From the NCBI RefSeq assembly GCF_021869535.1, contig NW_026262690.1, positions 47,492,001 to 47,556,000 on the forward strand: a DNA stretch of 64,000 bases. Direction: 5' to 3'. The notes beneath the pieces were generated by a model. The model was not told the origin of the DNA and did not search any database. It saw nothing but the letters and a program-made list of their open reading frames with translations. Source of the DNA: Mytilus californianus (taxonomy: Eukaryota). Positions 15,304 through 58,141 of this stretch are shown here, one piece after another (the stretch's first letter is position 1; each line of letters begins with the position of its first letter). The position numbers and the translations under genes were made by a program.

Positions 15304-18300
15304 ATGGTAAGAAAAATATAGTTTTCCAAAGTCAGTTTTTGATATGTTTTTTTTACTTATTTTTACCCTATCTCTTTATATAGATTATTCAAACAAAATA
15401 TGTAAAAAAAACCACATTTAAACACAATTTGCAAACATACAACCACGGAAAATATCTGTCAACGAACACAAACCATATATACATTTACAAAAAAACTATA
15501 TCCGGAACCGATTATATGCATACATGGTTTAAGCCTCACTTCGCGGTTAGCTTTGTGACCAGAAATATTCATTAGCATATTTCAGCGAAATTGGTTGCAA
15601 TGAAATACAGTGGCGGATCCAGAAATTTTCATAAGTTGGGGCCCACTGACTGCCTAAGAGGGGGCCCACTCCAGTCATGCTTCAGTTATTCCCTATATAA
15701 TCAACCAAATTTTTCCCACAAAACGGGGGGCCGGACCCCCTGCCCCCCCCCTTTCCCCCCTAAATCCGCCTCTGAAATACTATTACTATCATTCAAATAA
15801 AAACAGATAATTTCACATGTGACCGAAAAACACTGATAACTCCCTATTGCGCGTACCACAGAATTTTGTTGTTTGGTTCTGTCACTTTTTGAATATTTGT
15901 TTTATTCTGTGATTAATCAATGAACTGAATTATGTGCTGAGGGAAGGTTAGCATTTTTTTTTCTATTTGCGTGACACCCGTTGTATTGTCTGGTTTAAAA
16001 AAAAACTTAAAAAATAATTCAAAATACTTTGTAGGCAGAACATGGGCTTTCTGAAGAACAGATAGCAGGTAAGCCTACTAACCTAATTTAAAATACAGTC
16101 TAAAACTAATGACCGAAATTTTTACTGTTTCTTGACTGCAAGTGTTGCTACCCACCTATTGCAGTTCATTAAAAATTCTGACCAAATTGCAATCTTTTTT
16201 CTCAACCAAACTGTTCAACTGGTCAGAAATTTTAGCCAAACGCTGTAGAAATCCCTGAGTCAAGTCATCAAAATGCAAGGTGATAAGGTGATAATTTAAA
16301 GCATGCTTAAATATATGTGGTTACAATATGATGTTAATAAGTTTCCATGGGAGATTATCTAAAACCATTGACCCCTTTTTTGAAATGTTGATCTTTAAAA
16401 CTTCATGAGAACATATTCAAGCTTAAAATGTATTTCACCAAGTGTTTTAGATGTTACCCGGTAATTTAAAGAAAGCTTTGTAACATGCATAGAAAAACAC
16501 CATTTAAGAAGAAATAATTCAAAAACTTAAATTTTGACATTTATTCAGCAATTCAAAATACAATCCTGTAAGACTTGTTTTAAAACTATTATATTCGATA
16601 TATCTCTTTAACCAGACCTTATTACTATGATGAAAATATTGCTAAAAACTTCTATATACATCATTGTTATTATAAACAGTCATTTAAAGGAGATAGGTAG
16701 TCATTTTTTAATTGCTATAAAAATGTCAAAACTTAGCTTTAATACAATTTTTCTTTTAAAACGTCTTTTATTTTCATAAGAATCAGCCATCAGTTTTAAA
16801 TTAAAACCTGTTATATTCACTAAAATATATGTGGTTACAATATGTTGTTAATAAGTTTCCATGGGAGATTATCTAAAACCATTGACCCCTTTTTTGAAAT
16901 AATGATCTTTAAAACTTCATGAGAACATATTCAAGCTTAAAATGTATGTCACCAAGTGTTTTAGATGTTACCCGGTAATTTAAAGAAAGCTTTGTAACAT
17001 GCATAGAAAAACACCATTTAAGAAGAAATAATTCAAAAACTTAAATTTTGACATTTATTCAGCAATTCAAAATTCAATACCTATCATCTTTGGAATGCAC
17101 CTTTACAATAACAATTAGATGATAAGAAATTTATAGCTACACTTTCATAATAGCAATGAAATTGCCCAGTTGAACAGTTTGGTTTAATTAAACAAATGGC
17201 AATTTGGTCAGAATGTTGAAAGAAGTGCAATATGTTGAGAGCAACACTTGCATTCAAGTCACAGTAAAACATATTTATATTTAATAGTATCATGATTTTT
17301 TAAAACCCACAACGGGTCTTTCAGGCTTAAGATTTGAACGATTGGGACAGTTTTGTGTGATCATATAAATTCACACCCTTTTATTGTTCATCGAATTTTT
17401 ACAAGAAAAGCCTTCACCTTGTAAGCTACACAAGGGTTTGTCTTTGGGAATTGATTTCGAACGTAAAACTGTTGATTGATTGATTGACTTTTGTTGGATT
17501 TGCGCCATATTGCAAATATTTTACATACATATAAACAATAAATCTGGAGAGCTGATGGACCGGAATGGAGCTAGGGAATTTAGACTGACATGCAATGGTA
17601 AATGAGGTTATGTTGAATTGGGGCAGAGATTTTGAATTTCCATTTTGAGTGTCCCTATACCGACCGGACGTGGCTGCGGCCTATTTGTACCTCCCGCACA
17701 GCCAAAACGGACATTCTTCTTCGGTATAGCATGGAATTTATTGCCGGATATGGGCCCTTTATTGTTGAAAAATCCAGCTGTAATATACCAATCAGTCATA
17801 AAGAAAATAAATTTGTAGTTTTTTTTTTTTAAACCACAACAAGTTCTAAAGACGCTGCCCTGTACATGGTGTAATTTTTTTGCTACAATGAAATCCTAGC
17901 TGAATTCTGATCTCGTGTAAAAAAAAGGGATATATAGTAATTTTGGAAGTGTGATATCAGAACCATTAGATTTTAAATACGTTACAGTTTGAACTAGCTT
18001 ATACTAACTGCAAACTTTTCACATATTTAAAAACTATATTCTAGTTAAAATAGGCACTATCTATATGCATATGTGTGCAACTTCTTATTTGTCGTGTTTC
18101 GATGCATGTGTGTATATATATGTGTGTTCTTGTGTCTAAGACTTTTTGTGTCTGAATTTTCTCTTAAATATTATGAATGAATTTCAGCTATTAAACATGC
18201 CTTTTCTATCTATGATCGTGGTGGAGAAGGGGTTATTCTTACAAGAGAGATAGGAACACTAATGAAATCGCTAGGATACAACGTACCAAAAGATGAACTT

Positions 18301-21300
18301 GTTGATATCATGAACGAGGTTGATTTTGAAGGTTGGTCATACAAAAACTGTATTTCTTTTCATTTTAATTCCAACAGTTTTTTTGGGCAATTTGCATTTT
18401 AAAATGTCCTATGAATATCCGAGGATGTTAATCTAACAGCGCATGCTTGATTGTCTGAAGCAAGATTTTGACAGCCGATTGAGTAATTTAGTTAGATGTT
18501 CAAGTTATACATATATGGTTTAAAAATATGTTTGCAATATGACTTATGTAAACCAACATCAGTAGTTTATAAGACATGTATTACCAAAATAAGACTTAGT
18601 AGTCATAATTTAGCTATAGAATGTGAACGTTACTCTGTAATTTCTAGAAGTAATAGACCCTGTTGTTTTTGTAAAGATGACATTGAGGATGAGATACATT
18701 TCATTCTAAAATGTCCTACTTATCAAAGTCTTAGATCTTATTTTATTTCACCTTATTATTGGAAAACCTTCTATGTATAAATATATATAATTAATGAGTT
18801 CTATTAATCTTAGAGAGCTATGTAAATTCATATTTCGTGCACAAAAAATTAAGATCTGACATGTTGTAATATGTTTCACACTACCTTCTGCTATTTGTGT
18901 AGTTTATATGTTGTATGCCTATAGTTGTTATGACTTTGATAAATAAATATTATAATATTTACTTAGTATTAGATTTATAAAACTTATTTTTTTTATTTTC
19001 TAATTCATGAGATCTAAAAAATGGTGTAATCTCTCCTATTCATATACAATTTTTGTTGATTGCAGGTACCAGTGATTTTTTTAGAATAATACAGAATCAG
19101 AACTGATCGATGGAATATATGAAAAAATAACATGTATTATACTTACAAAATGCAATACAAAGTACAAACTTTTAGAAAATTATGGAGACGACTTATTATG
19201 CTTTGTGAACAGAATGCATTTTATCAGAACATTTTTTCTAATCTAAAATTTAAAATTATAGAAATGAAATCTTTTCCAACTGCGTGTTGTTAGATGACAT
19301 GCAATTCCAAATAATATGTTTTAGTTAATCACAAAAACTTTATTACTCCAAAGAAGCCATGCTTTCAATGAATAACAATGCATATAATTTTCCTAGTTAT
19401 TTTATTTTCATTCTAAAATGTTTACCTACTTTCAGGTAAAGGAATAATAGGTATACAAGAGTTTATGTCTGTAATGGTTAACAGGTCAAAAGAAGAAGCT
19501 TTCTCTAAAAAGTTGATAGATGCATTCCGGGTATTTGATGTCAGAGGAAAAGGTGTTGTTGACACTGAAGTTGTTCGCCATATATTTTCTTCAATGGAAG
19601 AAGAAATGCCAGATGAGGAAATAGACGAACTGTTAAAGGAAGCTAAAATTGATAAGGATGGTAATATCAAATATGAAGGTAAGTGTACAAAAAAATATAC
19701 AAACTCTTTTAAAGGTGTTTTTTTTAAAGTAAATATTGATTTAATCTTCTGTAAATACTAAGTTTGGCTAAGTCCATGTCGTTACATGTTATGCCATTGC
19801 AGGATGCATGTCATTTCGCGTATTTATCGTTCATTTTTGTAAGGTCACTAGATAGAACTAATGTGTAAGGTCACTAGATAAAACTAATGTGTAACATGAG
19901 TGTGTTCCTAACGCAACATTTATTTCACGTGTTACGATGAAGAACGACTGAAACCGATGTTACACAAGTTTTACGGTCACGATAACAAATTAGATATGTT
20001 CAAAAATGTGTCCTAAAAACAACACATCAGCATTTGTAACCCCTACATGAGAATGGTTACAATAGGTAACAAATGAGAACCAAGCAAATGCTGAGTTACA
20101 ATGGTTGCATTGGTTGAAAATGTTAAATTTACTTTTATCATTTATTATAAAAAACTTTTTTAAAGCAAATGCTATACATGGGTTACAATGGTATATGGTT
20201 ACAATGGTAACATGGGTTACAATGAATACAATGGTAACATGGATTACAATGGTTACATGGGTTGCACTGGTAACATGGGTTAAAATGGTAACATGGGTTA
20301 CAATAGTAACATGGGTTACAATGGTAACATGGGTTACAATGGTTATATGGGTTACAATGGTTACAAGGGTTACAATGGTTACATGGGTTACAATGGTTAC
20401 ATGGGTTTCAATAGTAACATGGGTTACAATGGTTACATGGGTTTCAGGTATTACAATGGTAACATGGGTTACAATGATAAACATGATAACATGGGTTACA
20501 AAGGTAACATGGGTTACACTGGTTACAATGGTAACAATGGTTTCATGGGTTACAATGGTTACATTGGTTACACTGGTAACATGGGTTACAATGGTAACTT
20601 GGGTTACAATGGTTATATGGGTTACAAAGGTAACATGGGTTACAATGATTACATGGGTTAAAATGCTTACACTGGTTACAATGGTAACAATGGTTACATG
20701 GGTTACATTGGTTACACTGGTAACATGGGTTACAATGGTAACTTGGGTTACAATGGTTATATGGGTTACAAAGGTAACATGGGTTACAATGATTACATGA
20801 GTTAAAATGCTTACACTGGTTACAATGGTAACAATGGTTACATGGGTTACATTGGTTACACTGGTAACATGGGTTACAATGGTTACATGGGTTACAATGG
20901 TTACATGGGTTACAATGGTAACTCGGGTTACAATGATTACAATGGTAACATGGGTTACAATGATTACAATGGTAACATGGGTAACAATGGTAACATGGGT
21001 TACAAATGTAACATTGGTTACACTGGTTACATGGGTTACATGGGCTACAATGGTTACATGGGCTACAATAGTTACATAGGTTACAATGGGTACACTGGTT
21101 ACAATGGTAACAATGGTTACATGGGTTACATTGGTTACACTGGTAACATGGGTTACAATGGTAACATGGGTTACAATGGTTACATTGGTTACAATGGTAA
21201 CATGGGTTACAATGATTACAATGGTAACATTGGTTACATGGGTTACAATGGTTACATGGGTTACAATGGTAACATGGGTTACAATGATTACAATGGTAAC

Positions 21301-24300
21301 ATGGGTAACAATGGTAACATGGGTTACAAAGGTAACATTGGTTACAATGGTTACATGGGTTACATGGGCTACAATGGTTACATGGGTTACAATGGTAACA
21401 TGGGTTTTAATGGTAACATGGGTTTCAATGGTAACATGGGTTACAATGGTTATATGGGTTACAATGGTTACAAGGGTTACAATGGTTACATGGGTTACAA
21501 TGGTTACATGGGTTTCAATAGTAACATGGGTTACAATGGTTACATGGGTTTCAGGTATTACAATGGTAACATGGGTTACAATGATAAACATGATAACATG
21601 GGTTACAAAGGTAACATGGGTTACACTGGTTACAATGGTAACAATGGTTTCATGGGTTACAATGGTTACATTGGTTACACTGGTAACATGGGTTACAATG
21701 GTAACTTGGGTTACAATGGTTATATGGGTTACAAAGGTAACATGGGTTACAATGATTACATGGGTTAAAATGCTTACACTGGTTACAATGGTAACAATGG
21801 TTACATGGGTTACATTGGTTACACTGGTAACATGGGTTACAATGGTTACATGGGTTACAATGGTTACATGGGTTACAATGGTAACATGGGTTACAATGAT
21901 TACAATGGTAACATGGGTTACAATGATTACAATGGTAACATGGGTAACAATGGTAACATGGGTTACAAATGTAACATTGGTTACACTGGTTACATGGGTT
22001 ACATGGGCTACAATGGTTACATGGGCTACAATGGTTACATAGGTTACAATGGGTACACTGGTTACAATGGTAACAATGGTTACATGGGTTACATTGGTTA
22101 CACTGGTAACATGGGTTACAATGGTAACATGGGTTACAATGGTTACATTGGTTACAATGGTAACATGGGTTACAATGATTACAATGGTAACATTGGTTAC
22201 ATGGGTTACAATGGTTACATGGGTTACAATGGTAACATGGGTTACAATGATTACAATGGTAACATGGGTAACAATGGTAACATGGGTTACAAAGGTAACA
22301 TTTGTTACACTGGTTACATGGGTTACATGGGCTACAATGGTTACATGGGCTACAATGATTACATGGGTTAAAATGGTTACACTGGTTACAATGGTAACAA
22401 TGGTTACATGGGTTACATTGGTTACACTGGTAACATGGGTTACATTGGTTACAATGGTTACATGGGTTACAATGGTTACATGGGTTACAATGGTAACATG
22501 GGTTACAATGATTACAATGGTAACATGGGAAACAATGGTAACATGGGTTACAATGGTAACATGGGTTACAATGGTTATACGGGTTACAAAGGTAACATGG
22601 GTTACAATGATTACATGGGTTAAAATGGTTACACTGGTTACAATGGTAACAATGGTTACATGGGTTACATTGGTTACACTGGTAACATGGGTTACAATGG
22701 TAAAATGGGTGACAATTGTTACATGGGTTACAATGGTTACATGGGTTTCAAGTATTACAATGGTAACATGGGTTACAGGTTTCATTCTCAAAAACCATTC
22801 ACCTAGTGTTAATATAGTGTAACCATTGTAACCGTGTAACTGGTCTTGAGAATGACAAAAGGTGCAAAAGTGAATGTAACCATTGTTACCAATGTTACCA
22901 TTGTAACCTATGTAACTATTGTATAAAGTAACCATTGTAACCTATGTAACCATTGTAACTCAGAAATTTCCAGAATCTAATTTAAAGTATAAACCAGTGT
23001 TACTACATGTATAGTGTAACCATACACCTTATCGCTAATCCCGCTTGACCCGAGAATCAGTCCCGCTCGAACTTTTGACGTCATACAACAATCACTTTTC
23101 CATTGTGGCGTCAGATATTTTCTATTATGACGTCAAAATTTTACGGGAACTTGTGTGATGTCCAGTAATGGCGGACAAATAGCGATAAGGTGTATTGTTA
23201 CTGTGTAACTGAAGATTGAAGCCTGTATTAACTTTATGAATAATAATACTTCAAAAAAATATTGAAAGTGAATGTAACCATTGTAACTCAGAAATTTCTA
23301 GATTTTAATTCAAAGTGAGAAAAAAAAACGCTTGTAAAAAGAGAATGTAACCAAACTCTGTACCTTACATATATAAAAAACTTAAAATGGTGAATGTTAC
23401 TGTTGTCACCAGTGAAACCATTCTCCTGTAGCAGTTACAAATTCTGACATGTTGATTTTAGGACACATTTCTAGCCATATATGTAACAAATTGTTTGATC
23501 GATAATATGTGTCTGCCTTAGATCCTGTCTTAGATATATCAAGAATAGTGATCTATTCTGTAAATGAGCCGATTGTGAAGTGACAATTACTAGTTGGAAA
23601 TGACTTTTAACAAGCTTTTGAAAAGTCTTTTAGATCGATACTTTTGCATTTTGTTAGGGTTTAAGTATGCTTAGTGAAGATCTAATAAGTCAAGCCTTTT
23701 TCAACTGATTTTCATAATTTGTTCTTATGTTGTGCTGTTACACCACTGTCACAGGTTAGGGAAGGATTGTCCAGTAAACATATTAAACATCATGCCATGA
23801 TTTATTTATAAGTTGTAATTTGCTTTGAACTAGTTTTCAGTAACTGCGAGTACTCTTAGATTGGTACTTAATTTTTGTTTGTGCTTCGTGCCATTCGTGC
23901 CAATCTAATAAGTCCAGTCATTTCCAATTGATTTTTACAATTTGTTCCTTTGTTGTGTTGTACCACTATCCCAGTTTAGTTGTTTTTTATAGTAACCCCG
24001 CCACATAGTTTATGATCTTGTGCCAAGTCAGAATCCTGTAATTCAGTGGTTGCCGTTTGTTGCTGTGTGCCATATTCGTTTTATGTTCATTGTTTTTAGC
24101 ATAAATTGTACCACATCTCATTATTTATATTTTATCTGTTAATGCAATAAATTTGCATGGTTATGTTATAATGATAGTATTTCCTAAATGTGTAGCTTGT
24201 AGAAGATAGATTTAATATTAAGTACTCGTGATATCATATTGAAAACTTAATGAAGAATTAGAACGACTTCAAGATTTGGTTAATGTTAATTTTTTAATAT

Positions 24301-25010
24301 ACATTAAAGCTTAATATATCATTCGTGAATGAATAAAATAAAAGAACATATTTCAAACCAATGTTACATATAGTCGTATGATTTGTAAATACACTGTAGT
24401 ACACGTTTACTCTACCTCATGTACATTTCAATAAAGATCGTTGATGATCGTAGGAAAATACGTTTTCTGGAGTGTTTAAAAAAAATTCTGAAATCTTACG
24501 AATAATTTGTTTTCATTTATATGTGTGTACACAACGCAAATATTCTGTATGACTTCGATACTTAATTGATCTGTGATGAATATTGCAAATGAAAGATCGT
24601 AGAACAATGCAGATATAAACATACAAATTTTTTTTCTTTTACAAAATTTTGACATATTATTAAGCAGATTGGTTTCTTGAAAGAAAGGATTTTTATAAAT
24701 CCACCTTTTTTCCCTATCCAATTTATCCCTTATACACGTTGTGTGTGATGCGAACTTGTCCTTCCATGGTTTAATTGAAGGGAGTGATAATAACTGTTTA
24801 GCCTTCAAGCTGCTAACATTTCCCGGTTATGTATTATATCTGAAAATTTCAATATATACCACATTTTCTTGTGATAATATGTATCTCATCTTTAAACAGC
24901 TACAGATCACAGATTTTAACGACAACAAAAGATTGGGATTTGAATTTTAATTAAGCCTTTATTTTATGTTTTTCTCTTTTTCAGATTTTGTTAGACAGAT
25001 AGTTAGATGA
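15304..25010 (+). CDS. Calmodulin-like protein A (149 aa), all four EF-hand loops degenerate
   Basis: Exons 15304-15306 (ATG|gtaaga), 16035-16068, 18188-18331 (144 nt), 19436-19678 (243 nt) and 24985-25010; phases are compatible, 450 nt total. [149 protein letters not shown]. Confidence 0.85.
15608..15774. mobile_element. Short GC-rich MITE in gene A intron 1
   Basis: TIR-like ends cagtggcggatccag ... aaatccgcctctg. Confidence 0.6.
16311..17078. repeat. Direct duplication of ~255 bp (period 514 bp) in gene A intron 2
   Basis: 16311-16564 is nearly identical to 16825-17078 (atatatgtggttacaatatg...cagcaattcaaaat). Confidence 0.85.
18440..18950 (+). mobile_element. LINE 3' remnant (CR1/L2-group C-terminal Cys/His domain)
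   Basis: ORF 18496-18780: [16 protein letters not shown]...[25 protein letters not shown], followed by an AATAAA-containing tail. Confidence 0.8.
20172..22780. repeat. 9-bp-unit satellite (ATGGGTTAC / AATGGTAAC / AATGGTTAC) with higher-order structure
   Basis: About 2.6 kb of 9-mer variants; landmark variants recur at spacings of 963 and 1107 bp. It produces all the MGYNG, VTMVTW and VTIVTH ORFs in the track. Confidence 0.95.
23024..23193. mobile_element. MITE nested in the right arm of the foldback-like element
   Basis: TIR acaccttatcgcta / tagcgataaggtgt; splits the unit gtaaccATtgttac and duplicates AT. Confidence 0.8.
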
Positions 25011-28150: not shown

Positions 28151-30037
28151 AGTTCACGAGGGCCTCATCTGGCTATTATCTAATACTTCGGCATTTAGCA
28201 AGATTCGATTCATAGATTTTGATGTTTGCTCTTTTCAGTTAGCCTTAGTTCTATGTCAAGTTGCAAATCTTTTCATGCGTATTTAGGAAAATAAAAAAAT
28301 TAAAAAAAAAAAACAATTAATGCGATAGGCATGTTCGGCAAAGTGGGTTTACCGAGATGAAGGTCTGGGAATTGAGAGGAATTGGATTGAACGTCCGCAT
28401 TCCGACCGATTGTGTCTATGTATCTATACATCCTGTACAGCCAATGGGGTGCTCCGATTTAGCATGAGTTCACTGCTGGATGAGAGAATTCCAGGTTGCC
28501 ATGTTACTTTACCCCAGTCTACGTTTGGTTGACAATGTTAATAATTTGTTTTAATGTTCTATTGAACTATAACTTGACTCTGAGCATTTTAGACAGATTT
28601 TCTTTAAAATATGACAGAATAATCTAACACAATATAGCGGTATATGAAATGAATTGATTCGTATAATTTAAATATATTTTATAATATAATTCTTCTAGAA
28701 AAAAAACTGACAAATTACTGCTACTTTAAATTGGCATGGAAGGCTATGATATTCCAATTTTCAACACAATGTTTATTTGGTCATTTGGTCACCATAAAAG
28801 GATTATAGGGTCCGTTTTATCATAGCATAATGTCAGCCAACACGGGTGTGTTGTCGATTGAGATCTATTTAAAAAGTTGGACCAAAGTTAGATTGAACTG
28901 TTCTAGCTCAGTAAAACGCATTGAATGAAATTATAAAATAACATTATTTTTAACATCAATGCACCTTTTGGTCAAAAGTGTATGTCCTCAAAAAGAAGTA
29001 ATCAATTTCGGTGGTATTTAAGATCGAAACCTCCTTTCCTTCCTTTTCTTAATAATGCCTCGCGAAATCGGAGAAAGTCAGGCTTGATCTTCTTTTTCCA
29101 GAAGTATTTCTTCAAGTAATGCCTTTTGAGTTTGCTTCACCTACTTTTTCCATTGAAGGGAATTCAAAGGACCTTTTCTGCATTTAATCAGCTGTGGATC
29201 TTAATTGCTTTGAGTTATTAAAAATAGATACGGTAAGGTATTACAACTTTGTGATTAGTAAAAGTACACTGTCACTGTATAACAATTAGTCAACAATTTT
29301 AAGAAAATGAGTTAACGTTGCGTTCCTATATTTTGAAAAGTAGATTTTTCAACATTAAGCCTTGACAGTTTCATAGAATTAATCAGAAATGTTGGTGATC
29401 TTTTAACAATTTTCTATGACTGGATGGATACCGATGTGTGGTCCTGGTTGACTGTTAGTCCCGAGGGTAGCATCAGCTCATTGGTCTGTGGTTCGCCACT
29501 GAAAAATAAATTTCTTAAATTTCCCGTTGGTAAATTTATAAATGGTTTGGAAACTATGGTTTTAAGTCCCCTAACCAAATTGACCTTCGTATGTTTTGAC
29601 TGTTTTATATATCAATACATTCCCGGCTTTCAAAATTTTGGGTTTGACCTTTCCTGGTGAAGTTAAACCCAGAAAAGCGCTCAACGCGCATAGTACCAAT
29701 GTGTTTCTTCATTCGTCGCTGTAGGGGACATGATGGCTGCTAAAACATTTTAAAGAGCACTTATATAAATAGGTCAAACAGCGTAAGTTAAATTAAACAA
29801 ATTAACTGCAGCTTTAAAATAAGTCGAAATTGTAAGGAATTAATTTATGAGATTAATGAAACTAGTTGTAGTCAGATTTTACTGTGAAAGATTAATTGTT
29901 GGACAATAAAAGTTCTTTTACTCATATTTGTTATATAGTTTATACCTAAACCAGTGTAAATTATATATAACTGTTTCGACACTAGTATACTCTGGACCTG
30001 AGAATACTTTATTTCATGATGATTATCTTCGTTACAG

Positions 30038-41265: not shown

Positions 41266-44200
41266 CTACTGCTTTTCATTCATCATTTTCGTAAAAGCTG
41301 AAAAATAACAGTGTTAAAATTATTTTCTTGGTGAATAACGTGTTCATTGAGGATGGCAATATGGTTATATTTTCTATGGAATTAATCAAAAGAAGAAAAC
41401 GTCAGTTGTGTCGCAAAACTCTATAGAAATTCAGTACAGAATCGCTGGTTAAAAAGTGCACTATGAATAAAATAGAGTGGTTATGGTCAATGAGATGATA
41501 ACCCATCGATGAAAAAGACAGCTAGGGTTTACATACGGGTTTAAAAAATACGACAATGTCTCAATATATCCTGAGTCATTGAAATTTTTGAATAAAAACA
41601 TAGAATATCAAACATCTACCATCTACATCAAACTATAAAAAGAACAAAATATGAAAATATCCTCTGGCAAGATACCGCGTGAACATGTGCAGTGAGTCAA
41701 CTAATTATCAGTTCTTAAACCCATTTTCTTGATCCTCGAAATAACATAGAATTATATTTAACAAATATAACAATCAGCTAAGAAAAGCAGCTTCATAATA
41801 CTGTTATAACGGACAACATGTCAAGCAATCCTAAATAACAATCAGCTAAGAAAAGCAGCTTCATAATACTGTTATAATGGACAACATGTCAAGCAATCCT
41901 AAATAACAATCAGCAGAGAAAAGCAGCTTCATAATACTGTTATAATGGACAACATGTCAAGCAATCATAAATAACAATCAGCTAAGAAAAGCAGCTTCAT
42001 AATACTGTTATAATGGACAACATGTCAAGCAATCCTAAATAACAACTAGCTGAGAAAAGCAGCTTCATAATACTGTTATATTGGACAACATGTCAAGCAA
42101 TCCCAAATAACAATCAGCTAAGAAAAGCAGCTTCATAATACTATTATAATGGACAACATGTCAAGCAATCCTAAATAACAGCAGCTGAGAAAAGCAGCTT
42201 TATAATACTGTTATAATGGACAAAATGTCAAGCAATCCTAAATAACAATCAGCTAAGAAAAGCAGCTCCATAATACTGTTATAATGGACAACATGTCAAG
42301 CAATCCTAAATAACAATCAGCTGAGAAAAGTAGCTTCATAATACTGTTATAATGGACAGCATGTCAAGCAATCCTAAATAACAATCAGCTAAGAAAAGCA
42401 GCTTCATAATACTGTTATAATGGACAACATGTCAAGCAATCCTAAATAACAATCAGCTGAGAAAAGCAGCTTCAGAATACTGTTATAATGGACAACATGT
42501 CAAGCAATCCTAAATAACAATCAGCTGAGAAAAGCAGCTTCAGAATACTGTTATAATGGACAACATGTTAAGCAATCCTAAATAACAATCAGCTAAGAAA
42601 AGCAGCTTCATAATACTGTTATAATGGACAACATGTCAAGCAATCCTAAATAACAATCAGCTGAGAAAAGCAGCTTCATAATACTGTTATAATAGACAGC
42701 ATGTCAAGCAATCCTAAATAACAATCAGCTGAGAAAAGCAGCTTCAGAATACTGTTATAATGGACAACATGTCAAGCAATCCTAAATAACAATCAGCTGA
42801 GAAAAGCAGCTTCAGAATACTGTTATAATGGACAACATGTCAAGCAATCATAAATAACAATCAGCTAAGAAAAGCAGCTTCATAATACTGTTATAATGGA
42901 CAACATGTCAAGCAATCCTAAATAACAATCAGCTGAGAAAAGCAGCTTCATAATACTGTTATAATAGACAACATGTCAAGCAATCCTAAATAACAATCAG
43001 CTAAGAAAAGCAGCTTCATTATACTGTTATAATGGACAACATGTCAAGCAATCCTTAATACTGTCGTATCATAGAATGTTGGCTGTTGAAGTACACAAAC
43101 CTAAAGTACTGAACTGCTATCACAGAAATGTAGCATTATTCTCGTGTATCGGATGGAAACAATAATAGAAATGAAAATAAAGTATAAGAAGTAAAAAAAT
43201 ATATATCATCGTAAAGAATTTGACATCAAATTCCTAAAGTAGAATCATTTTTCCACAATGAATCCCTGTACTTGAGATCCCTGTCGTGAAGAATGTAGAA
43301 ATGAAAATATATGATTCATTGAAATCTGAGGAATCACTGTTGATAAGCGCATATCGAACCAACTGAGTGACGAAGAAGGTGCGAACCGAACATCATTTTA
43401 TAGAGAAGGAAAATAAAAAAAGTGAAAAGAAAATTGGTTGCCATTAATAAAAAATATTTAGAAAAATACGGAATGGCTAAGATTTGATTTTTTTTTCTTA
43501 GATAATTTAATATAGTCATATATGTTTAAGAACGTGCATTACAAAATAAATAAAATGAAATATATGAGTCATCTAAATATTTGAATATTTTCATTTGGAC
43601 AGGATAAAGTAGTCTCTGGTAATAAAATATTGTTGGCAGTATGAAAAAATTAAAGTGTATTTTGTTTTCATTGAAAATAAGACTGCTTGTTAATAAGGCA
43701 AAATTATTCTACCTTGATAGTATATTTTCCCCTCGCCGTCTACTTTAACTTCTTTTACTATTTTTCGAAACTCCACATCTGAAAAATTCTCTTCTCCAAG
43801 ACTTGTCATAATGTCTTTCAGTTCATGCAATTCTACAGAGCCATCTCCTTTCAGATCAAACTGTTTAAATGCTTCATTTGCTTCTTCCTCTTCATCTCTC
43901 GATGGGTCATGCAACTTTTTCGCATAATATAATAAAAAGTCATTTATATCAATTTTGCCATCACCTAAAATGAAAAAAATATTCAAAGCAAACGAGAACA
44001 AAAATCATCTATGAAAACAAAGTTCTAAAGAGTCGATGTAGTCGAAAATACGATAGCATGAATAATTACATTGCATGTATGTTAAACTTTAATTAGAAGC
44101 CGACAATTTGATTAGTAGGGAACAATCGCAAGGCAGTCCAAAAGTACATTTTATTTCACAATGAAATGAAACATTAATTTCTACAAGTGCTTCCAATGAC

Positions 44201-45517
44201 AACATCACAACATAGGAAAACAAATGAAAAGCTTGAAATAACTCGTAATTTCATGGTTGTAGCATTAAAATTTTATCATTAGAAATGAATGCTTCTCTTT
44301 TATAATTTTATAGAGCTTGAAGACTGTTGATCGTGCGCACATGATGTTTAATACAAAATGTTTTTTTCAGTGAACTCTTTTACACTCAACAAAATTTCAA
44401 ATCGAAGCATTTAATTCTTAAGTCGTGTTCATTTTATTTTTTTGCTTTTGCTTAACAATTCGACAAGTTATTTGAAATTAACCAAATAGTTAAAGATTTT
44501 ATCAAACTGAATAGACATTCCGCTACACAGGGCATACATGTCAATATTATATTGATTTTGGTTTTACATGATTTAATTTTTGCTGATACAATTTATTTTT
44601 TTAATCGGATCTAACCGTGTATTCAATGAAAACATCTGAAGTATTTTGATAAGGTATGGATTTGCATATAATTTTAAAAATGACAAAGTCTCAATCCATT
44701 TCTTACAGAGCCTATGTATAAGAGATAATGACATAGGTAAACAGTGAGCAGTTACGAAACGTCTATTTTCTACTTACTTTCCATACCATCGGAGTCTATT
44801 GCCTGGAACATATCTAACAGTTCTTTTTCTGTAGGATTACAACCTGTACTACGTACAACTTTTGCTACGTCATCTCTTGATAGATTCCCAGTTTCGTCAG
44901 CTTCAAACAAGGCGAAAGTTTCTCTGATTTCTATAAAGAGAATAAGATATGTTACTAGGTATAAAATGATACAAAATGCACAGACTTATTGTGGGGTTCG
45001 TGTTGCTCATTCTTTAGTTTTCTATGTTGTGTTTTGAGGACTGTTGTTTGTCTTTTGGTCGTGTTTCGTATGTTGCCATGGCGTTGTCAATTTGTGTTTG
45101 ACTTATGAGTGTTAATACGCCTTTGGTATGTTCCTCATTTCTTTTCTAATGCTATCTCATCAAAATTATCTTTCAATCTAACAACTGAGGATTCATAGGA
45201 TTATAGACGTTTTGATAGTGTTTTTCAAGTGGTGTGTGTTTTACTCATCTTACCTCTTTCTTCTTCCTTTGTTAAAAGTCCTGCCTGTAAAAGATGAAGA
45301 CTTTTTTGCAGAAAAAGGGTAAATTGTCATTACAGTCACTAAAAGTAATTCAAATGTAAAACGTATATCTCTCTCATATTATAAAAAAGGAGATGTGTTT
45401 AACTCACTACTAGGTTTTTATCTTGTAAAAAACATAACTATTGAAACTGGTCTGTTAGTAAGAGAAATTATGCGAAATTTACAAATTATAAAAGCTGTAA
45501 AAGTCTTAACTTACCAT
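41266..45517 (-). CDS. Calmodulin-like protein D (153 aa)
   Basis: Minus-strand exons: ATG 45517-45515|gtaagt, 45284-45254 (31 nt), 44930-44787 (144), 43964-43713 (252) and 41297-41266. MAGLLTKEEEREIRETFALFEADETGNLSRDDVAKVVRSTGCNPTEKELLDMFQAIDSDGDGKIDINDFLLYYAKKLHDPSRDEEEEANEAFKQFDLKGDGSVELHELKDIMTSLGEENFSDVEFRKIVKEVKVDGEGKIYYQAFTKMMNEKQ*. Confidence 0.88.
41765..43056. repeat. Tandem array, 68-bp unit x19, in the last intron of gene D
   Basis: aaataacaatcagct(a/g)agaaaagcagcttcataatactgttataatggacaacatgtcaagcaatcct; highly homogeneous copies. Confidence 0.95.
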
Positions 45518-45844
45518 GATTTAGCTGGTACATGTAACTTCAAAGTTTGACATTTTTTCAAATTTGTCGCAGTAAATATCAAACAATAAATCATTTAAAT
45601 TGAAAAAAGACCGATATAAGCAGTCAAACATATCATTGGTTTTGCCCTGACAAAAGATTTTATTGTCTATCTGTTACCGAATCGACATAGAAAGCAATAT
45701 TGATTTGAAATATCTAACTGTGTACCAAACTTTGAAGTATACAATAATATATGAAGATATCAAGTAAAGAGGTGACAACTCTATGATATGTTTTCTGCAT
45801 AGTCTCTCGAAGCTAGAGATTATATAGGGCTTTTACTATATATA

Positions 45845-46510: not shown

Positions 46511-46529
46511 ATATATATATATATATATA

Positions 46530-50163: not shown

Positions 50164-53100
50164 TCAGAACTTCTTATTCATCAATCTAGTAAACTCTGCA
50201 ATAACAAAAATACAAATAGCTGTTAGGTAATAACAAAATACAAAGTTTTATTGCAGAATTTTTTCTATTAAAGTTACATTGCTTCTAATATCCAACGTAA
50301 TTACATATGATTAATTTACAGTTTGTATCTACGGAATACTTTAATGAAGAATAATATGCATATATACGGATTAATATATATAAAGTACATTGTTATTATA
50401 CCATGCAGTATTATAAATGTAACATAAATACCCTCGAGTCCGGTTATTTCGTTCATCATGCAAGTTTGTTCACTCCCTTAGGACAACGTTAAATGAACGG
50501 TAAGTTCTTGCTAACAAAAAGTAAAATAACAAAATATACCGAACTCCAAAGAAAATTCAAAACGGAAAGTCCCTTTTCAAATGGCAAAATAAAAAGCTCA
50601 AACACATCAAACGAATTGAAAACAACTGTCATATTCCTGACTTGGTATAGGCATTTTCTTATGTAGAAAATGGTGGATTAAACCTGGTTTTATAGCTAGC
50701 TAAACCTCTCATTTGTATGACAGTCGCATATAATTCCATTATATTGACAAAAATGTGTGAGCAAAACAAACAGAAATAATGGGTAAAAATGTCAAAAATT
50801 GGGTACAGCAGTCAATATTGTTAGTAAATAATTTTGTTTTAAACTGTTTAACAATTTCGATGAAGATAGAGTCCAAAAATCCAAAACAAGTAACTTTTGA
50901 ACACAGAAATATGTGTTGCGATAAAAAACGATGCTTTTGACTAGCTTCAACAACTTTCAACGTAGGAGTCATACAGCTTTAAACATGATAGAAATTACCG
51001 GTCAGCATCGTATATATCAGTTATTAGACACGGTAAGTGTCTTTTTCCAACAGTTAGTTTCTTTTTTATATCACTGTTTCCTTGATTGATACAATTGAGG
51101 AAAGCAAATTAAAACATGATCGAATTGACTTCGTTTGTACTTTTCTTTATTTACTTAAACCTGTTTACCACGTTTATAAAAAAGGAAAGAATTTTTTCCA
51201 TACATTTCATGAGTATTCATTTTGTTTTAACATTTGTTATTTTAATTTTTATAACAGGTACATTCCTTCATTATAAAAATTGTAGGCCATAATGAGTTGT
51301 TACTAATTTTGCTACCTGTGTACTATGAAATAGAAAGCTGAAGTAGATCCCATTATAAAAATCTTTTCTATTAGTTTTAGCGATTTTTTCAAAGTGTTTT
51401 TTTTTAGTATAACATTAAAAAAAAGAAGATTTTTTTCTTCTATGTTTTGACTTCAAGTAAAACTAGAAAAAACATTAAAGAAAAACTGCTACTGTCTATA
51501 GTGCATCAGAAATTTGATTTCTAGAACACAATGCATGTCTACCAGGGTGTGCTTACCCTGCTGACCCACTTGATCTTGCCACGATTGAAGATCAAACGAT
51601 TTTGGTTGTTCTCACTCCTATCGTTGTCTATGAATTGCAACTAATCATCGGTACCCTATCTTAAATTCATATAAAACTGACCTGTATAATCTACTTTACC
51701 ATCAAAATCAACATCAGCCTCTTTTATCATTTCTCGGAAATCTGCTTCCGACATTTTTTCATCTCCCATCGCGGTCATTACTGTTTTAAGCTCGTGTAGA
51801 TCTATATAACCATCACCATTTAGGTCGAACATTGAGAAGGCTTCTCGTGTTTCTTGTTCTTCGTTTCGTAGAGGATCATAAAAATGCTTAGCGTAGTACT
51901 CCAAAAACTGATTAAACTGAACTTCGCCATAGCCTACAATATGGAAATGGTGCTTTTACAAAATTATAATTCTTATTGCAATACGGTGCTTGTTTGAACT
52001 CTCTGCTGAAGGCCGATTTGTGCCGTTGAAATCTTTGCAACTTTCTTTTAGTTATTTAATATTTATTTTTCGTTACTTTTGTCTCGTTTTTTTTTTAACA
52101 TTATAAAATGTTCAACTCTTTCAAAAATCAATATGATATCTATCTGATACAGCAAATATGAGCAGGTAAACCCCACTTCTACTGGTATAAGTCCTATGAT
52201 GTTATACGAAACTACCTGCAAGATTTAATCTGTTTTAAATAATAGATAGTTTAAAAAAACGGAAAAAGAACTCTTTATAAGCGTCCAAACGCTTTTCTGG
52301 ATTTATCTTCACCAGTAACGCCGAAAATTTGAATGCCAAGGATGTTCAAATGTTGGAACAAATTTTTTCAACACATTCAGTCTTCATGGAGAGTTTCCAC
52401 ACGATTTTGAGAAATTATTTAAATTAGTTAATCGTGCAAGACAGAATCTATCAAAAAAATGTATTTTGATAATACTATAAAGTTTATAGCAAGATAACTT
52501 ATAAAATATAATTGGGACGGTTGTTAAAAGACAATCCTGGCCTGCATGGTAGAATTAATCTTTCCTATTTTTATAGCTGAGGTTAAGTGAAAATACAAAC
52601 CATCAGTATCGATTGCTTTAAACATTTCCTCTAGTTCTTTTTCTGTCGGATTACAACCTGTATTCCTAACAACTTTAGCGATTTCCTCTCGCGAGAGTGC
52701 TCCTGATTTATCAGCATCGAATAATTCAAACGTACTTCTGATATCTGGAACATAAGGAATGCTTAATGAAATAAATTGAATTCATTAACACATGTATTCA
52801 TATTTCTATTTTATGATCATGGCCGTTACTATTAAAATATACAGTCAACATGTATGGTAAACCATTCTGAAGAGAAGAATCTAACGGGTAGGTTTCAAAC
52901 TAACATCTAAAGGGGATGCTTCAAACTAACAGTGTTTGTATTAAATCCCGATGATGTCAGGCAATCGCCAATAGTTTCAATTATGTTCATTTAAAGAGAT
53001 TTTGCCCTTCGTGAAAAAGTATTAACAAAAATACCGAACTCCAAGGTAAATTTAAAAAAGGGGAAGTCTACAAAACCTCGAAAAAAATCAAACGCTCGAC

Positions 53101-56100
53101 CATATCAACCAACAGAAGGCATATTCCCGACTTAGTACAGACATTTTCAGAAGAACATGGCGGGTTACACGTGTTTTTATAGCTAGCTTAACCTACCAAG
53201 TGTACGACAGTTGTTTCCAGTAGTCAGCACTTCTGTGTTGACATGACATATCGTTGATGTGGTCATATTTATGACTTAACTGTAACAGTTAAGTCATAAA
53301 TATGACCATATCAATGATATGTCATGTTGTTCGAATTACTGAAATTATTTTCTACCCCAGGAATATAGTACCTTCAAGTTGGCTGTATTTGGCAAGACTT
53401 ACAGAATATATGTAAGAGATTACTATATTTTTATTTCTGTAGAATACGTCATCAACCAAGTCAGTAGTACTAAAAGTGCAAACCTATGAACTTTAGTTAA
53501 ATGAATGTGAATTTGAAGATGACCCTAAACATGCCAATAATATACTTAGCAAGAACACAATATGGACATGCGACCGCGTGTGGAGCCTGTATTTAATGAA
53601 AGAAAAGATGGCAGCTATCAAGTACCATAAGGCTAGGGAAGGCATACAACGCCATGGTAAAAATAGGCGGACCACATAGCAAACTAAAGATTGAACAAAA
53701 CGAACCCTGCCAAAACCGGAAATAAACTTAGTGGTCACGGAATGGCCAACTTAAGTCATATTCTCCTTTCCATACGTATGTCTTATCGTCGAATGTGATT
53801 TACTAGTATTACCGATAAACTTGCCCAATCTTTATTTTTGTGCAGTTTTTTTTCAGTTGTTGTTTTGTTTTCTTTTAGTCATTGAGTGTTCTTTCGTCCT
53901 TCCTAGCTTAAGACGTTTGATTACCCCGTTGGTATCTTTTCTGTTCCGCTCCACAAAAGTTGACCACAGGAGGTTAAGTCTATTCTATGAAGCCACTTTT
54001 GATATATTGCTCCAAATGAATTTAAACGTCTTCGACCTTCAAAACAGTTTGCCTTCGTCGTTGTTAATGAAAGTAATTCAAGTAAAGCATGCAAAATAAA
54101 TAAAGCGTGTTCAAGATTCACTACTACAGATTCAATACAATAAGTCTCGGGAATATCCCCCTTGTAGACATAGTTTCAGTACTGAAAATTATTACTTTAA
54201 ATTTTTCCTCGATAGGTCGATAGATGATCATTTCTTGAATGACCTTCATCAGAATGTTTGTGCATCCAAAAATGTATCAGAAAGGCATGGTGATCCCAAA
54301 AGGCCGAGGGGGTTGAAAATGAATAGCAAAACCAATCTGAAGTCTACTATGTCTATGGAAAGAGCTGTTAAAGCTTTAGTACGATATTCAACCTTTTAAC
54401 ACTGGACCAAACTATTAACCAACTAGCATGTCGATCGTCAAAAGATTGTAAAAGATGGCAGCTTCATTATTGTATCTTTACAAAAAATAAAGATTGTTTG
54501 TTGTCACTCCGAAATTATGTGCTTTACCTTCTCGTTCATGCTCAGGCAGTCTAGACGCCTAAAATAAAAATAAAGAAAGATTTAAAGAACATCATATTTA
54601 GCGATACATTTGTGAAATTGTACATTATTTGATTCAAAACGTTCTTTTCGTTTTAAAAAATTATGATTAACAACGATAATGAATGTGTGATGAATTTTAA
54701 ATATTAATTCATTTTTGTCCAGAACTCCTTTTCAATGTGTTTATACTACACCATGGAGTTTCTATACAATGACAATATATGATTAAGGATATTCGCTTCT
54801 AATGTGACATATGTAAATGATAAAAATGATAAAACATGAACAGTAGAGAATCAAATATAAAGTTTCCAACTTGACTGATATGTGACATTAAATAATTTCT
54901 TATCAGACTATGCCTTATGGGTAGTAAGATTTTTGCTTGGCATTGTCTTAAATTTGGCGGCGCAACGGGTTGGTAGATAATAAACTTGTTTCATGATTAA
55001 AACGATAGATGGAACATGCAAGCAGGATTTTTTACTCTTCAGGGAAACCATTCGAGTTCAGCCTGTTTTAGGTGATAATGCTATTTAATCTTCAATCGTT
55101 TTTATTTCTTATTAATTGTCCTTTGGGACCTCCAAACTCTTCTAATCTCATGTCAAATTAAAGACTCGTTGTCAATTTTTAGTTTTAACAACCCATGATA
55201 AAAAAAGGCGAAGGAACAAACAACAGTCTTGAAAACACTTCACATAATACTGATTATTAACTAACACGAACCCAACCAAAAACAATTGAACTCCGGAAGT
55301 ATGAACATTTCCAGCTCTACAAGTGACATCCGCCGGGTTACTTAAAATTCCCTTGATGAATATAGGCAACAGCAGTTTATCTATGTTCAAATTTCATGAT
55401 TCGACAAAGTAGATACAGATCAAAAGATAACAAACAAAACTGGGAATCGAATGAACTCCAACAAGAAGCGAGGCGGGATGCGTCGAGAAGGTAAACACTG
55501 CCTGATATGCAAGAATCACCTGGTATGCAAATCCACATTCAATCAAAATGTCACAATCGGGAATAGGATAAAATGTAAATTTACAGATCAAATGACTTTT
55601 CTGGTACCTAAAGTTTCTAGACCACGAAAACATGTCACGATTGAGTTCAGATACAGACACGTCGTATCGGCTGATCAAACCAAAAAGACCGAAGACAGAA
55701 AGCCAAACCTAGACAAGGAATCAGATCTATGCATGATGGAGATGCATTCTTTAATTTAAAGTTATATAGAAATTTGATAACAGCAATTTAAATAAAACAA
55801 TATCCTTAAAACTAATGCAGGTCTAGATCAGTCGTTTTTGCTCATAACTCTGTGAAGTAGCTTTTGTGTAAGGAGCACACCCCTGTCAATGAATTCTGTA
55901 TATATTAAACATAGACGATATGTAAACCCCATACGATGGGGCAAAGGGTTTGTTTTTTGAGAAATGAGAAGTTGACAATTGGAAATCATCACGTTTGTCA
56001 TAGATTCTAGTTCTGTATAAATATGGAGGAAGAGATCGAAGTATGAATTGTAGAAAAGAAAGACCCTCTAGTTTCGGACGTATCTTTAATATCAATTTCA

Positions 56101-58141
56101 CTGGGATATATGAGATACATGCACTCACTGAAAATTTGTTTATTGAGTGACAGAACATCGTCAATATATCTGAAAATGGAACTAATTTTGTATCAACAAT
56201 TCCCATTTTTGTAGAAAAAGATCTGTGTAATGAGACGTTGTAGTCGATCTTCCAACTGAGCATGGGGAGTAGTAATGTAAAGCATAAAAGAAGTATTGAC
56301 AGTACTGAATCAAAGTACTGAAGTACTGAACATCGGATGACCGCAAGTTCTTGTGGATGGTCACAAGCACTTGTCTCAGAAAACAAAATCATATCTCTAT
56401 ACCAGAAAGTGAGGTTAAGGTACATAGATATATTTTTTTCTGAGACAAGTTCGTGCGTGGATGATGAATAAATGACAGGGAATTCAACCTCACTGTAATA
56501 ACTATTATATTGTAGTGATACAAATCAGTATACTCTGGTTTGTTGTTATATATTATATTAATATTTGTATATAACAGTTTCATGTACATATAATTTTCAT
56601 TCATTTGTATATCATTCTATTCTACTATTCTAATTATAGTGCAGTTGCAAGTGCATGATGGACACTCTTCTGTAATAATTCGATTTTTCTAATAGATTGG
56701 ATTTGAATAGGCATTCATATTTTCCCGCAAAACGTTCTTGAGATATTCTTCCGCATGCGTTAACACAAATTTTCGGTATTCTTGATTTGTTATTGATATA
56801 TATATTTCTCACGACAAAACATTTTCATATCATTTATCTATGTTCTGAAAAATTATTTTCATGAATATTTATTGATGAAATTGATATCTAACAAGCGATT
56901 AGGAATGTTATTTTGCGTTCGGTTATCAGTCAAAAACGAAAGTCACGTGAGTAGAAATGTCTGTGGCAACAATACACCGGAATGCCCTCACGGTCATCCG
57001 ATGTAAAAATTGTAAATATTGTGATTGAAGATTTTGTAGTAGATTTATAGAACTTTTAAGAATCCACATCTAATTGACACCGCTGATTGCATATACATCA
57101 TCACAATATTTCCGAATGCCATCTTTAATTGTAGAAAATTGTTGTAAGAACTTGACAGTGATGTTCAGTTGAACATCTTGACGAAACGAATATATATCGT
57201 TCTTTGTAAGGATATTTATGACAAGAATAAAAACGGAAGATTTTTATCGTCCTTTTTTATGTTAAAACCCAAGAAAAGAAAGACTGATTTGTGATTTTCA
57301 TATATCTCCTCCTTCGTGAATGGTATATGTTGGATTTCTAGTTTTGCTGTGAATTCCAATTTCTTCCGTTAGGCAGTTAAAATAAAGCATGATACAATAG
57401 TGAATTGGCTTATTATCTTGTCAACCCTATGACATCCCCATTTTCATAAACTATCGGTGTCTGTAAATTCTCCATCCATAAAACTTATCCGAATGTGAAA
57501 GTTTCAAATAAAATTCAGGTTCTAACTCCTTTACGTAAAGAATGGGATACTTGTCGTTTTCTTAAAATATCTTACCACATCTAAGACATCTTGCCACATA
57601 TTTGTTTGCAAAGGTTCATCCATAAATGCGCTGCTTATGTAATACAGTATAGTTTTCATAAATAAAAAAAACGAGAATGTATAAAATGGCACCTGTATTC
57701 AATTCATAATCAAAGATTTCTACATTTTTATACATGGATTTTTGAATATTTAGGACTGAGCTTTAATTATGAAGTTTAATCCAGAAATGAGCTCAAGACG
57801 TATACAATTTATGAAGTGATATATTCAATTTCTGGTTATTCTCAAACCATAACAAGTGGGCGAAAGTTTGAAATGAAACTAATAAAAGTTTCTCACTCCC
57901 TTACATAAATAATGGATACTAGTTTCAATTCTTTTTCATTTTCTCACAAATTTCATACATTTTTTAATTTCAAACACATTGCCATAAAATTATATAAAAT
58001 GTCTTTCAACTGTGTTTACAATTAGATGATGTATTTTAATATATTAGTTACCAATCAAAGTAACTAGTATTCAATGGTTAAGACCACATAACTATGTACA
58101 AAATCAGGAAAGAGGTAAAGCAAGAAATAATTCCTTACCAT
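50164..58141 (-). CDS. Calmodulin-like protein E (153 aa), paralog of D
   Basis: Minus-strand exons: ATG 58141-58139|gtaagg, 54558-54528 (31 nt), 52744-52601 (144), 51933-51682 (252) and 50195-50164; AATAAA at 50087-50082. MASRLPEHEREDIRSTFELFDADKSGALSREEIAKVVRNTGCNPTEKELEEMFKAIDTDGYGEVQFNQFLEYYAKHFYDPLRNEEQETREAFSMFDLNGDGYIDLHELKTVMTAMGDEKMSEADFREMIKEADVDFDGKVDYTEFTRLMNKKF*. The ATG exon is the least certain part. Confidence 0.87.
53241..53327. other. 87-bp near-perfect palindrome
   Basis: 43-bp arms (53241-53283 and 53285-53327) separated by one base, with two mismatches. Confidence 0.92.
55200..56240 (-). mobile_element. Old, degenerate Penelope-like (Naiad-type) element in gene E intron 1
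   Basis: Minus-strand frames give FRYIDDVLSLN (about 56170-56140), IYDKRDDF, APSYGVYIS, LLTQKLL and LISRYDVSVSELNRDMF, followed by the PLE-type 3' UTR (gtcacttgtagagc...gggttcgtgtt). Confidence 0.8.

What the first reader, a model, noticed from the sequence alone, without database searches (positions are those of the whole stretch)
15304..58141. Tandem calmodulin-like cluster in which each paralog has a different EF-hand on/off pattern
Seen, 12-residue loops: A = [12 protein letters not shown] / [12 protein letters not shown] / [12 protein letters not shown] / [12 protein letters not shown]; C = [12 protein letters not shown] / [12 protein letters not shown] / [12 protein letters not shown] / [12 protein letters not shown]; D = EADETGNLSRDD / DSDGDGKIDIND / DLKGDGSVELHE / KVDGEGKIYYQA; E = DADKSGALSREE / DTDGYGEVQFNQ / DLNGDGYIDLHE / DVDFDGKVDYTE. 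By the established rule (ligands at 1, 3, 5, 7, 9, 12; Gly at 6) the predicted usable sites are about 0 in A, 4 in C, 1-2 in D (EF2, perhaps EF3) and 3 in E (EF2 lost). Inference: a panel of Ca2+ sensors with graded stoichiometry and lobe specificity in about 43 kb. Bivalve calmodulin-like expansions are known in general (biomineralisation, muscle, cilia), but I cannot tell whether this cluster has been described.
Basis: partly seen in the sequence, partly recalled or inferred. Interest (0 to 1): 0.72.

Follow-up and report, generated by a model that had tools for sequence, protein, structure and literature searches.

The report
Conserved mussel calmodulin-like gene cluster

Summary
The cluster is real. 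Four intact genes lie at 15304-58141: A and C on the + strand, D and E on the - strand. All keep calmodulin's intron positions. A partial copy, B, lies upstream of C. All 16 loop strings can be read from the DNA.

The window is Mytilus californianus. Models A and D equal XP_052105257.1 and XP_052105251.1, both named "calmodulin-like". Gene order and loop states are conserved in M. edulis and M. galloprovincialis, with dN/dS of 0.05-0.11, so these are working genes, not decaying ones.

The genome holds at least 59 calmodulin-type exons, most of them in arrays on this chromosome. 24 of the 53 examined deviate in EF3 or EF4, so mixed on/off patterns are typical of the family. Expansion of the calmodulin family in shelled molluscs is published.

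A resembles the Ca2+-insensitive light chain CALML4.

The scan noted a similar calmodulin-like trio elsewhere in this genome (s1-312318).

Verdict: an ordinary, annotated paralog cluster of low novelty.

The parts
15304..25010 (+). Gene A, 149-aa calmodulin-like protein. Exons: 15304-15306 (ATG), 16035-16068, 18188-18331, 19436-19678, 24985-25010. No EF loop fits the consensus.
   Evidence: Model built. It is identical to XP_052105257.1 (P0013). It aligns end to end with calmodulin, E 2.6e-42. There are 0 PROSITE-type loops in 3 species. dN/dS is 0.09-0.11.
30016..31690 (+). Element B, a partial duplicate of C's N-lobe. Exons: 30016-30181 (EF1' DVTDNCVINTWE) and 31629-31690 (second half of EF2'). 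The donor is in phase 0, which fits C's 31-nt exon.
   Evidence: Relatives carry 224-aa annotated B+C proteins (P0001, P0025, P0028, P0026). dN/dS is 0.28.
32215..39581 (+). Gene C, 149-aa calmodulin-like protein. Exons: 32215-32217 (ATG), 35305-35335, 36719-36862, 38395-38637, 39553-39581. All four loops fit the consensus; EF3 is atypical (Asn at position 6, Asp at position 12).
   Evidence: The ATG exon and its upstream ~95 nt are conserved in M. edulis and M. galloprovincialis. The last exon and 3'UTR are covered by RNA contigs from 39551 onward and by a few raw RNA reads. dN/dS is 0.05.
41266..45517 (-). Gene D, 156-aa calmodulin-like protein. Exons: 45515-45517 (ATG), 45254-45284, 44778-44930, 43713-43964, 41266-41297. 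The 3'UTR reaches at least 40943.
   Evidence: Spliced contigs in runs X2 and X3 give joints 41297|43713, 43964|44778, 44930|45254 and 45284|45515. The model is identical to XP_052105251.1 (P0018). dN/dS is 0.09-0.10.
44776..44786 (-). Donor region in D's EF2 loop. It holds the 9 nt GTATGGAAA, which encode the extra Met-Glu-Ser, followed by the GT of the donor actually used.
   Evidence: The sequence GATGGTATGGAAAGTAAGTAG is identical in M. edulis and M. galloprovincialis. MES is present in the annotated D proteins of five Mytilus species.
50164..58141 (-). Gene E, 153-aa calmodulin-like protein. Exons: 58139-58141 (ATG), 54528-54558, 52601-52744, 51682-51933, 50164-50195. EF1 and EF3 are canonical. 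EF2 is dead (Tyr at position 5, Gln at position 12). EF4 has all ligand positions but Phe at position 4.
   Evidence: Annotated 153-aa orthologs with the same span exist in M. edulis and M. galloprovincialis. dN/dS is 0.08-0.09. Expression in this species was not tested.

Best explanation
The region is an old, conserved cluster of calmodulin-derived paralogs in Mytilus californianus, made by DNA-level gene duplication. It belongs to a chromosome-wide, lineage-specific expansion of the calmodulin family. Each gene encodes a small four-EF-hand adaptor that most likely clamps helical (IQ-like or CaM-binding) segments of partner proteins.

Shown here:
- The genes are intact and annotated.
- They keep calmodulin's exon borders.
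- They are syntenic in at least three species and under strong purifying selection.
- Their loop states are conserved between species.
- D is transcribed, with a 3-residue insert in EF2, and C's 3' end is also covered by RNA.

Inferred from the EF-hand ligand rule:
- C is a calmodulin-style Ca2+ switch with up to 4 sites.
- E is a sensor with a half-dead N-lobe (2-3 sites).
- A, and in this species D, have no canonical site. They most likely act as Ca2+-insensitive, constitutively bound subunits of the light-chain type, as shown experimentally for vertebrate CALML4.
For: - Gene models have GT-AG borders throughout.
- Models A and D are identical to RefSeq proteins.
- Every exon scores as EF-hand in Pfam.
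- The best PDB matches are all calmodulin, gap-free from end to end for A.
- 48 of 49 paralogous exons in the genome, including the canonical calmodulin gene at C110:43.516 Mb, share the same exon borders.
- The order UNC-79 / A / B-C / D / E is kept in M. edulis and M. galloprovincialis.
- dN/dS is 0.05-0.11 at dS 0.18-0.36.
- Loop states are identical or nearly so in orthologs. A more distant A ortholog (P0041) is also fully degenerate.
- Spliced D contigs were found in two runs.
- There are at least 59 family exons, in arrays at 6.3-6.8, 47.5-48.6 and 52.95-53.34 Mb.
- PMC7016017 reports 20-46 calmodulin-family copies in shelled molluscs.
- CALML4 lacks the chelating residues in all four EF-hands, does not bind Ca2+, and serves as a myosin-7 light chain (PMC10579538).
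- The Atlas cluster nearest to A by features is 'Calmodulin-like protein 4', score 0.95 (a lead only).
Against: - No Ca2+-binding or partner data exist for any of these proteins.
- The consensus rule (the PROSITE-type pattern, recalled from memory) misses non-canonical sites. D's 15-residue EF2 loop, or its near-miss EF1 and EF3, could still bind.
- Expression of A and E in this species was not examined. The single reads call covered only D and the end of C.
- D was absent from run X1 and from the 6% sample of raw RNA run X7.
- Runs X1-X3 are labelled RNA only by guess, although spliced contigs show they contain cDNA.
- The family tree on 81 columns is largely unresolved. Whether A, C and D/E arose locally or were brought together is therefore unknown.
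Confidence: 0.8

Rival explanations
1. One reading: a graded panel in which D keeps a working EF2 (and perhaps EF3), because the ancestral donor at 44787 is used and yields the canonical loop DSDGDGKIDIND in a 153-aa protein.
For: The ancestral donor G|GTATGG is intact and conserved in three species. The joined loop matches the consensus. Contigs drop rare variants, so a minor isoform cannot be excluded.
Against: Both spliced contigs (X2, X3) use 44778. All annotated D proteins in five Mytilus species carry MES, and no 153-aa member is in the 90% cluster. The used donor, GTAAGT, is much closer to the consensus.
Confidence: 0.1
2. C is not a plain four-hand gene. Its main product is the 224-aa six-EF-hand B+C protein, so the C entry in the panel is wrong: 5 canonical sites in this species, with an extra degenerate N-terminal pair.
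For: Annotated 224/223-aa models exist in M. edulis, M. galloprovincialis, M. trossulus and M. coruscus. The frame is open and the phases are compatible in the window. B's dN/dS of 0.28 lies below neutral expectation.
Against: C's own ATG|GTAAGT exon and upstream region are conserved. More distant relatives have spliced 149-aa transcripts that start MASELSRE... (P0002, P0034). No RNA junction 31690|35305 was examined here. Another annotation instead fuses A+B+C (P0027), which shows that these models are not settled.
Confidence: 0.35
3. A and D are decaying or silent copies (pseudogenes in the making), and their odd loops are simply mutational decay.
For: They have no canonical loops. D differs from its orthologs at several ligand positions: EF1 D to E, EF3 D/E and E/Q.
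Against: Frames and splice sites are intact in all species examined. dN/dS is about 0.1. A's degenerate loops are conserved even in a relative about 75% identical. D is transcribed and correctly spliced.
Confidence: 0.03

Closest known systems
Canonical calmodulin (present in this genome at C110:43,515,759-43,515,998, locus L010)
   Same: Length of 149-156 aa, four EF-hands in two lobes, and gap-free alignment. The exon borders are identical: ATG | 31-34 nt | 144 nt | 243-252 nt | 26-32 nt.
   Different: Only 38-52% identical over the C-lobe exon. Loops are degenerate in A, D and E. D carries a 3-residue insert in EF2.
Vertebrate CALML4, the Ca2+-insensitive light chain of myosin-7a/7b (PMC10579538)
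   Same: A calmodulin-derived protein, about 40-50% identical to calmodulin, that lacks the chelating residues in all four loops, as gene A does. It is the Atlas cluster nearest to A by features.
   Different: Orthology was not tested. No partner is known for A. A replaces several ligand positions with Lys or Arg.
Lineage-specific calmodulin-family expansions in shelled molluscs (PMC7016017) and plant CML families
   Same: Many tandem calmodulin-like paralogs with variable numbers of working EF-hands.
   Different: This particular cluster, its loop states and the EF2 insert in D are not described in any paper I could find.
Other calmodulin-like clusters noted by this scan in the same genome (s1-312318, s1-312168)
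   Same: Tandem calmodulin-like genes with EF-hand decay.
   Different: They lie on different DNA and I did not examine them here.

Membership tests
Calmodulin-like (calmodulin-derived four-EF-hand) proteins | Four EF-hand helix-loop-helix units in two pairs, ~150 aa, alignable to calmodulin over the full length | tested here: met
   Pfam EF-hand_7/_1/_6 hits on every exon. The PDB top 60 are all calmodulin, with A aligned at 4-148 without gaps, E 2.6e-42.
Calmodulin-like (calmodulin-derived four-EF-hand) proteins | Descent from the calmodulin gene, shown by shared intron positions and phases | tested here: met
   All four genes, B, the canonical calmodulin gene and 48 of 49 paralogous exons share the borders.
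Canonical calmodulin | Near-invariant sequence and four consensus Ca2+ loops | tested here: not met
   38-52% identity to the genome's own canonical exon. Only C has four consensus loops.
CALML4-type Ca2+-insensitive light chains | Loss of chelating residues in all four EF-hands | tested here: met
   Gene A has 0 of 4 loops fitting the pattern in three species and in P0041. This is true for D only in M. californianus.
CALML4-type Ca2+-insensitive light chains | Orthology to CALML4 and binding to myosin IQ motifs independent of Ca2+ | not tested
   There is only a feature-based Atlas neighbour. No CALML4 sequence was available through the tools, and there is no binding assay.
Troponin C / myosin essential or regulatory light chains | Closer sequence kinship to those families than to calmodulin | tested here: not met
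   None appears among the 60 best PDB matches for A's ortholog or D's main exon. The Atlas lists a troponin C cluster for D only at rank 4, with no better score.

The most novel reading that the evidence does not exclude
D's EF2 may be a splice-controlled or non-canonical site. Two conserved donors 9 nt apart would toggle the only consensus loop of D (DSDGDGKIDIND) against a 15-residue loop (DSDG-MES-DGKIDIND). In that case Ca2+ sensitivity of this protein would be set by 5' splice-site choice. Alternatively, the long loop binds Ca2+ in a new geometry. In parallel, A would be a molluscan Ca2+-blind calmodulin whose Lys/Arg-substituted loops hold it in one state as a permanent subunit.
Probability: 0.1. 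Interest if true: 0.55.

Novelty: new member of a known kind. Interest (0 to 1): 0.25.

Why it matters
The finding gives a clean, conserved set of natural calmodulin variants: 4 sites, 2-3 sites, none, and one with an insert in a loop. These sit next to each other in a mussel genome and could serve as test material for how EF-hand loss reshapes calmodulin-like proteins into Ca2+-independent subunits. It does not open a new question. Calmodulin-family expansion in shelled molluscs is published, and Ca2+-blind relatives such as CALML4 are characterised. The main practical value is the correction that rule-based site counts must use the real splice form.

Tried and rejected
- A pattern search for the 31-nt second exon found those of C, D and E but missed A's, which is 34 nt with a weak pyrimidine tract. 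It was recovered by aligning ortholog P0007.
- Raw RNA run X7 (6% read) gave no depth on D and only a few reads on C's 3' end. This gives no verdict on D in that sample.
- The high-depth blocks at 39940-40339 and 44940-45139 are dispersed repeats, not gene signal.
- The careful maximum-likelihood tree did not finish in 288 s, so the quick tree was used. It resolves only D+E+L036 (SH-aLRT 88).
- The pseudogene reading for A and D was rejected on dN/dS, synteny and RNA.
- Troponin C or myosin light chain membership was rejected on PDB ranking.
- Five literature searches found no paper on this cluster.
- Rfam found nothing in the window.
- Pfam found nothing in four other long ORFs.
- Spliced models were never sent joined to any search tool. 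Exons were searched by reference. Whole-protein searches used database proteins returned by the tools (P0007, P0012, P0013, P0018). Joining was done only inside local scripts, for translation and dN/dS.
- The third and last word search went to D rather than E, so E rests on annotated orthologous loci.
Full report
**Observation.** The EF2 and EF4 loops are not contiguous. Each is cut by a phase-1 intron, after the first base of the Gly codon at loop position 4 (EF2) and of the codon at position 12 (EF4).

The reported span runs from the ATG of A (15304, ATG|GTAAGA) to the ATG of E (58141, ATG|GTAAGG). Unique ATG|GTRAG sites also precede C (32215) and D (45517).

**Gene models.** With the small second exons located, four complete frames result:
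- A: 149 aa
- C: 149 aa
- D: 153 aa, or 156 aa with an alternative donor
- E: 153 aa

Exon sizes are 3 / 31-34 / 144 / 243-252 / 26-32 nt. From general knowledge of the vertebrate CALM genes, this is the calmodulin gene plan with exons 4 and 5 fused.

A fifth element, B (30016-30181 and 31629-31690), copies C's EF1 exon and the start of its next exon. It ends at a phase-0 donor that fits C's 31-nt exon.

Exons were searched by reference, and whole proteins were taken from database hits.

**What the proteins are.**
- Every exon scores as EF-hand in Pfam. A's scores are weaker than those of C, D and E.
- D's main exon and A's ortholog hit only calmodulin among the best 60 solved structures. A aligns without a gap over residues 4-148.
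- The paralogs are 28-56% identical to one another and 38-52% identical to the genome's own canonical calmodulin exon.

**Identity and annotation.** Word searches with the open segments around the large exons returned Mytilus proteins. Cluster look-up shows members from M. californianus on a contig of 126,941,415 bases, which is the length of the window's contig C110.

My model A is identical to XP_052105257.1, and my 156-aa D is identical to XP_052105251.1. Both are named 'calmodulin-like'. The window is therefore M. californianus, and at least A and D are already annotated.

**The D splice form.** Reads and contigs were laid on 39540-45539. Two runs each carry a spliced contig of depth about 20, with these joints:
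- 41297|43713
- 43964|44778
- 44930|45254
- 45284|45515

All of my borders are confirmed. However, the donor used in the EF2 loop is A|GTAAGT, 9 nt beyond the ancestral G|GTATGG. The mRNA therefore reads DSDG-MES-DGKIDIND. The same insert is present in the annotated D proteins of M. edulis, M. galloprovincialis, M. trossulus and M. coruscus, and the donor region is identical in three species.

C's last exon and 3'UTR are covered by contigs from 39551 onward and by a few raw RNA reads on the expected strand.

**Conservation.** Loci fetched for the orthologs show the order UNC-79 / A / B-C / D (reverse) / E (reverse) in M. edulis (two assemblies) and M. galloprovincialis. All exons map at full length without gaps, at 88-100% nucleotide identity.

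Nei-Gojobori estimates against those species:

| Gene | dN/dS |
|---|---|
| A | 0.09-0.11 |
| C | 0.05 |
| D | 0.09-0.10 |
| E | 0.08-0.09 |
| B | 0.28 |

dS across these comparisons is 0.18-0.36.

The loops of A, C and E are the same or nearly so in the orthologs. D varies at ligand positions: EF1 is EADETG here against DADESG, and EF3 ends in Glu here against Gln. B's EF2' is consensus here but DVHG in the M. edulis group. A relative of A about 75% identical (P0041, a spliced 149-aa product) is also degenerate in all four loops.

**Site prediction.** I applied the PROSITE-type EF-hand pattern, recalled from memory, together with the ligand rule:
- A: 0 of 4.
- C: 4 of 4. EF3 is atypical, with Asn at position 6 and Asp at position 12.
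- D as transcribed: 0 of 4 in this species and 1 (EF1) in the M. edulis group.
- E: 2 strict matches. EF4 fails only at non-ligand position 4. EF2 is dead, with Tyr at position 5 and Gln at position 12.

These counts are inference, not measurement.

**Family context.** C's large exon finds at least 59 matches in the 1.65-Gb genome. Most are on the same chromosome, in arrays at 6.27-6.80, 47.5-48.6 and 52.95-53.34 Mb. An exon with the canonical calmodulin sequence lies at 43.516 Mb.
- Three further genes lie 45-62 kb past the window's end. One of them (L036) groups with D and E, SH-aLRT 88.
- 48 of 49 paralogous exons share the same borders.
- 24 of 53 exons deviate from the pattern in EF3 or EF4, and 7 deviate in both, A and D among them.

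Mixed loop states are thus typical of the family. A and C sit on long, unplaced branches.

**Literature.** PMC7016017 reports lineage-specific expansions of the calmodulin family in shelled molluscs, at 20-46 copies. I found no paper on this cluster.

PMC10579538 shows that CALML4 is 44% identical to calmodulin, lacks the chelating residues in each EF-hand, does not bind Ca2+, and acts as a Ca2+-independent light chain of myosin-7a. The Atlas cluster nearest to A by features is 'Calmodulin-like protein 4' (a lead only). D's neighbours there are generic EF-hand clusters.

**Mechanism.** The following are shown: old DNA-level duplicates of calmodulin, retained under constraint, at least D transcribed, and loop states stable over the Mytilus radiation. 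The functional roles are inferred:
- C works as a calmodulin-type Ca2+ switch.
- E works as a sensor with an impaired N-lobe.
- A, and here D, work as Ca2+-insensitive bound subunits of the CALML4 or light-chain type.

Whether C is mainly made as the 149-aa protein or as the 224-aa B+C protein is open. Annotation favours B+C in four species. C's own conserved ATG exon, and 149-aa transcripts in more distant relatives, favour the short form.

**Verdict.** The genes are annotated and the phenomenon is known, so interest is low.

Noticed in passing
window:20175-22751: An 18-bp satellite (TACATGGGTTACAATGGT, ~145 copies) fills much of gene A's 5.3-kb last intron and creates long spurious ORFs on both strands. 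The scan also noted it as s1-302729.
   Followed up: partly
window:41767-43060: A 68-bp tandem array (19 copies, 95% matches) lies inside gene D's last intron.
   Followed up: no
window:39940-40339 and 44940-45139: Two short blocks show very high depth in RNA contigs and raw reads, with many loose ends. They are dispersed, transcribed repeats and not part of the calmodulin-like genes.
   Followed up: partly
window:45500-46900: Another first-reader note places a minimal hammerhead ribozyme at 45845-46510. Rfam finds nothing there at E up to 1, nor anywhere in the window at gathering score.
   Followed up: partly
window:9200-15300: The upstream flank is syntenic with the region after the UNC-79 gene's 3' end in M. 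edulis (L004 82-969 matches window 9858-10764). The last UNC-79 exon therefore probably lies near 9.8-10.2 kb.
   Followed up: partly
G000:C110 6.27-6.80 Mb, 47.60-48.59 Mb, 52.95-53.34 Mb; canonical exon at 43,515,759-43,515,998: Large tandem arrays of calmodulin and calmodulin-like genes lie on the same chromosome, with at least 59 exon matches genome-wide. Many copies at 53.0-53.3 Mb are nearly canonical.
   Followed up: partly
P0027 (M. galloprovincialis VDH98021.1, 358 aa): An older annotation fuses A, B and C into one 358-aa 'calmodulin'. The phases allow this, which shows how unsettled the automatic models of this locus are.
   Followed up: no
window:61802-63485: Two overlapping long ORFs (202 and 419 aa) have no Pfam match. 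A weak tblastn hit suggested a retroelement-like motif.
   Followed up: partly
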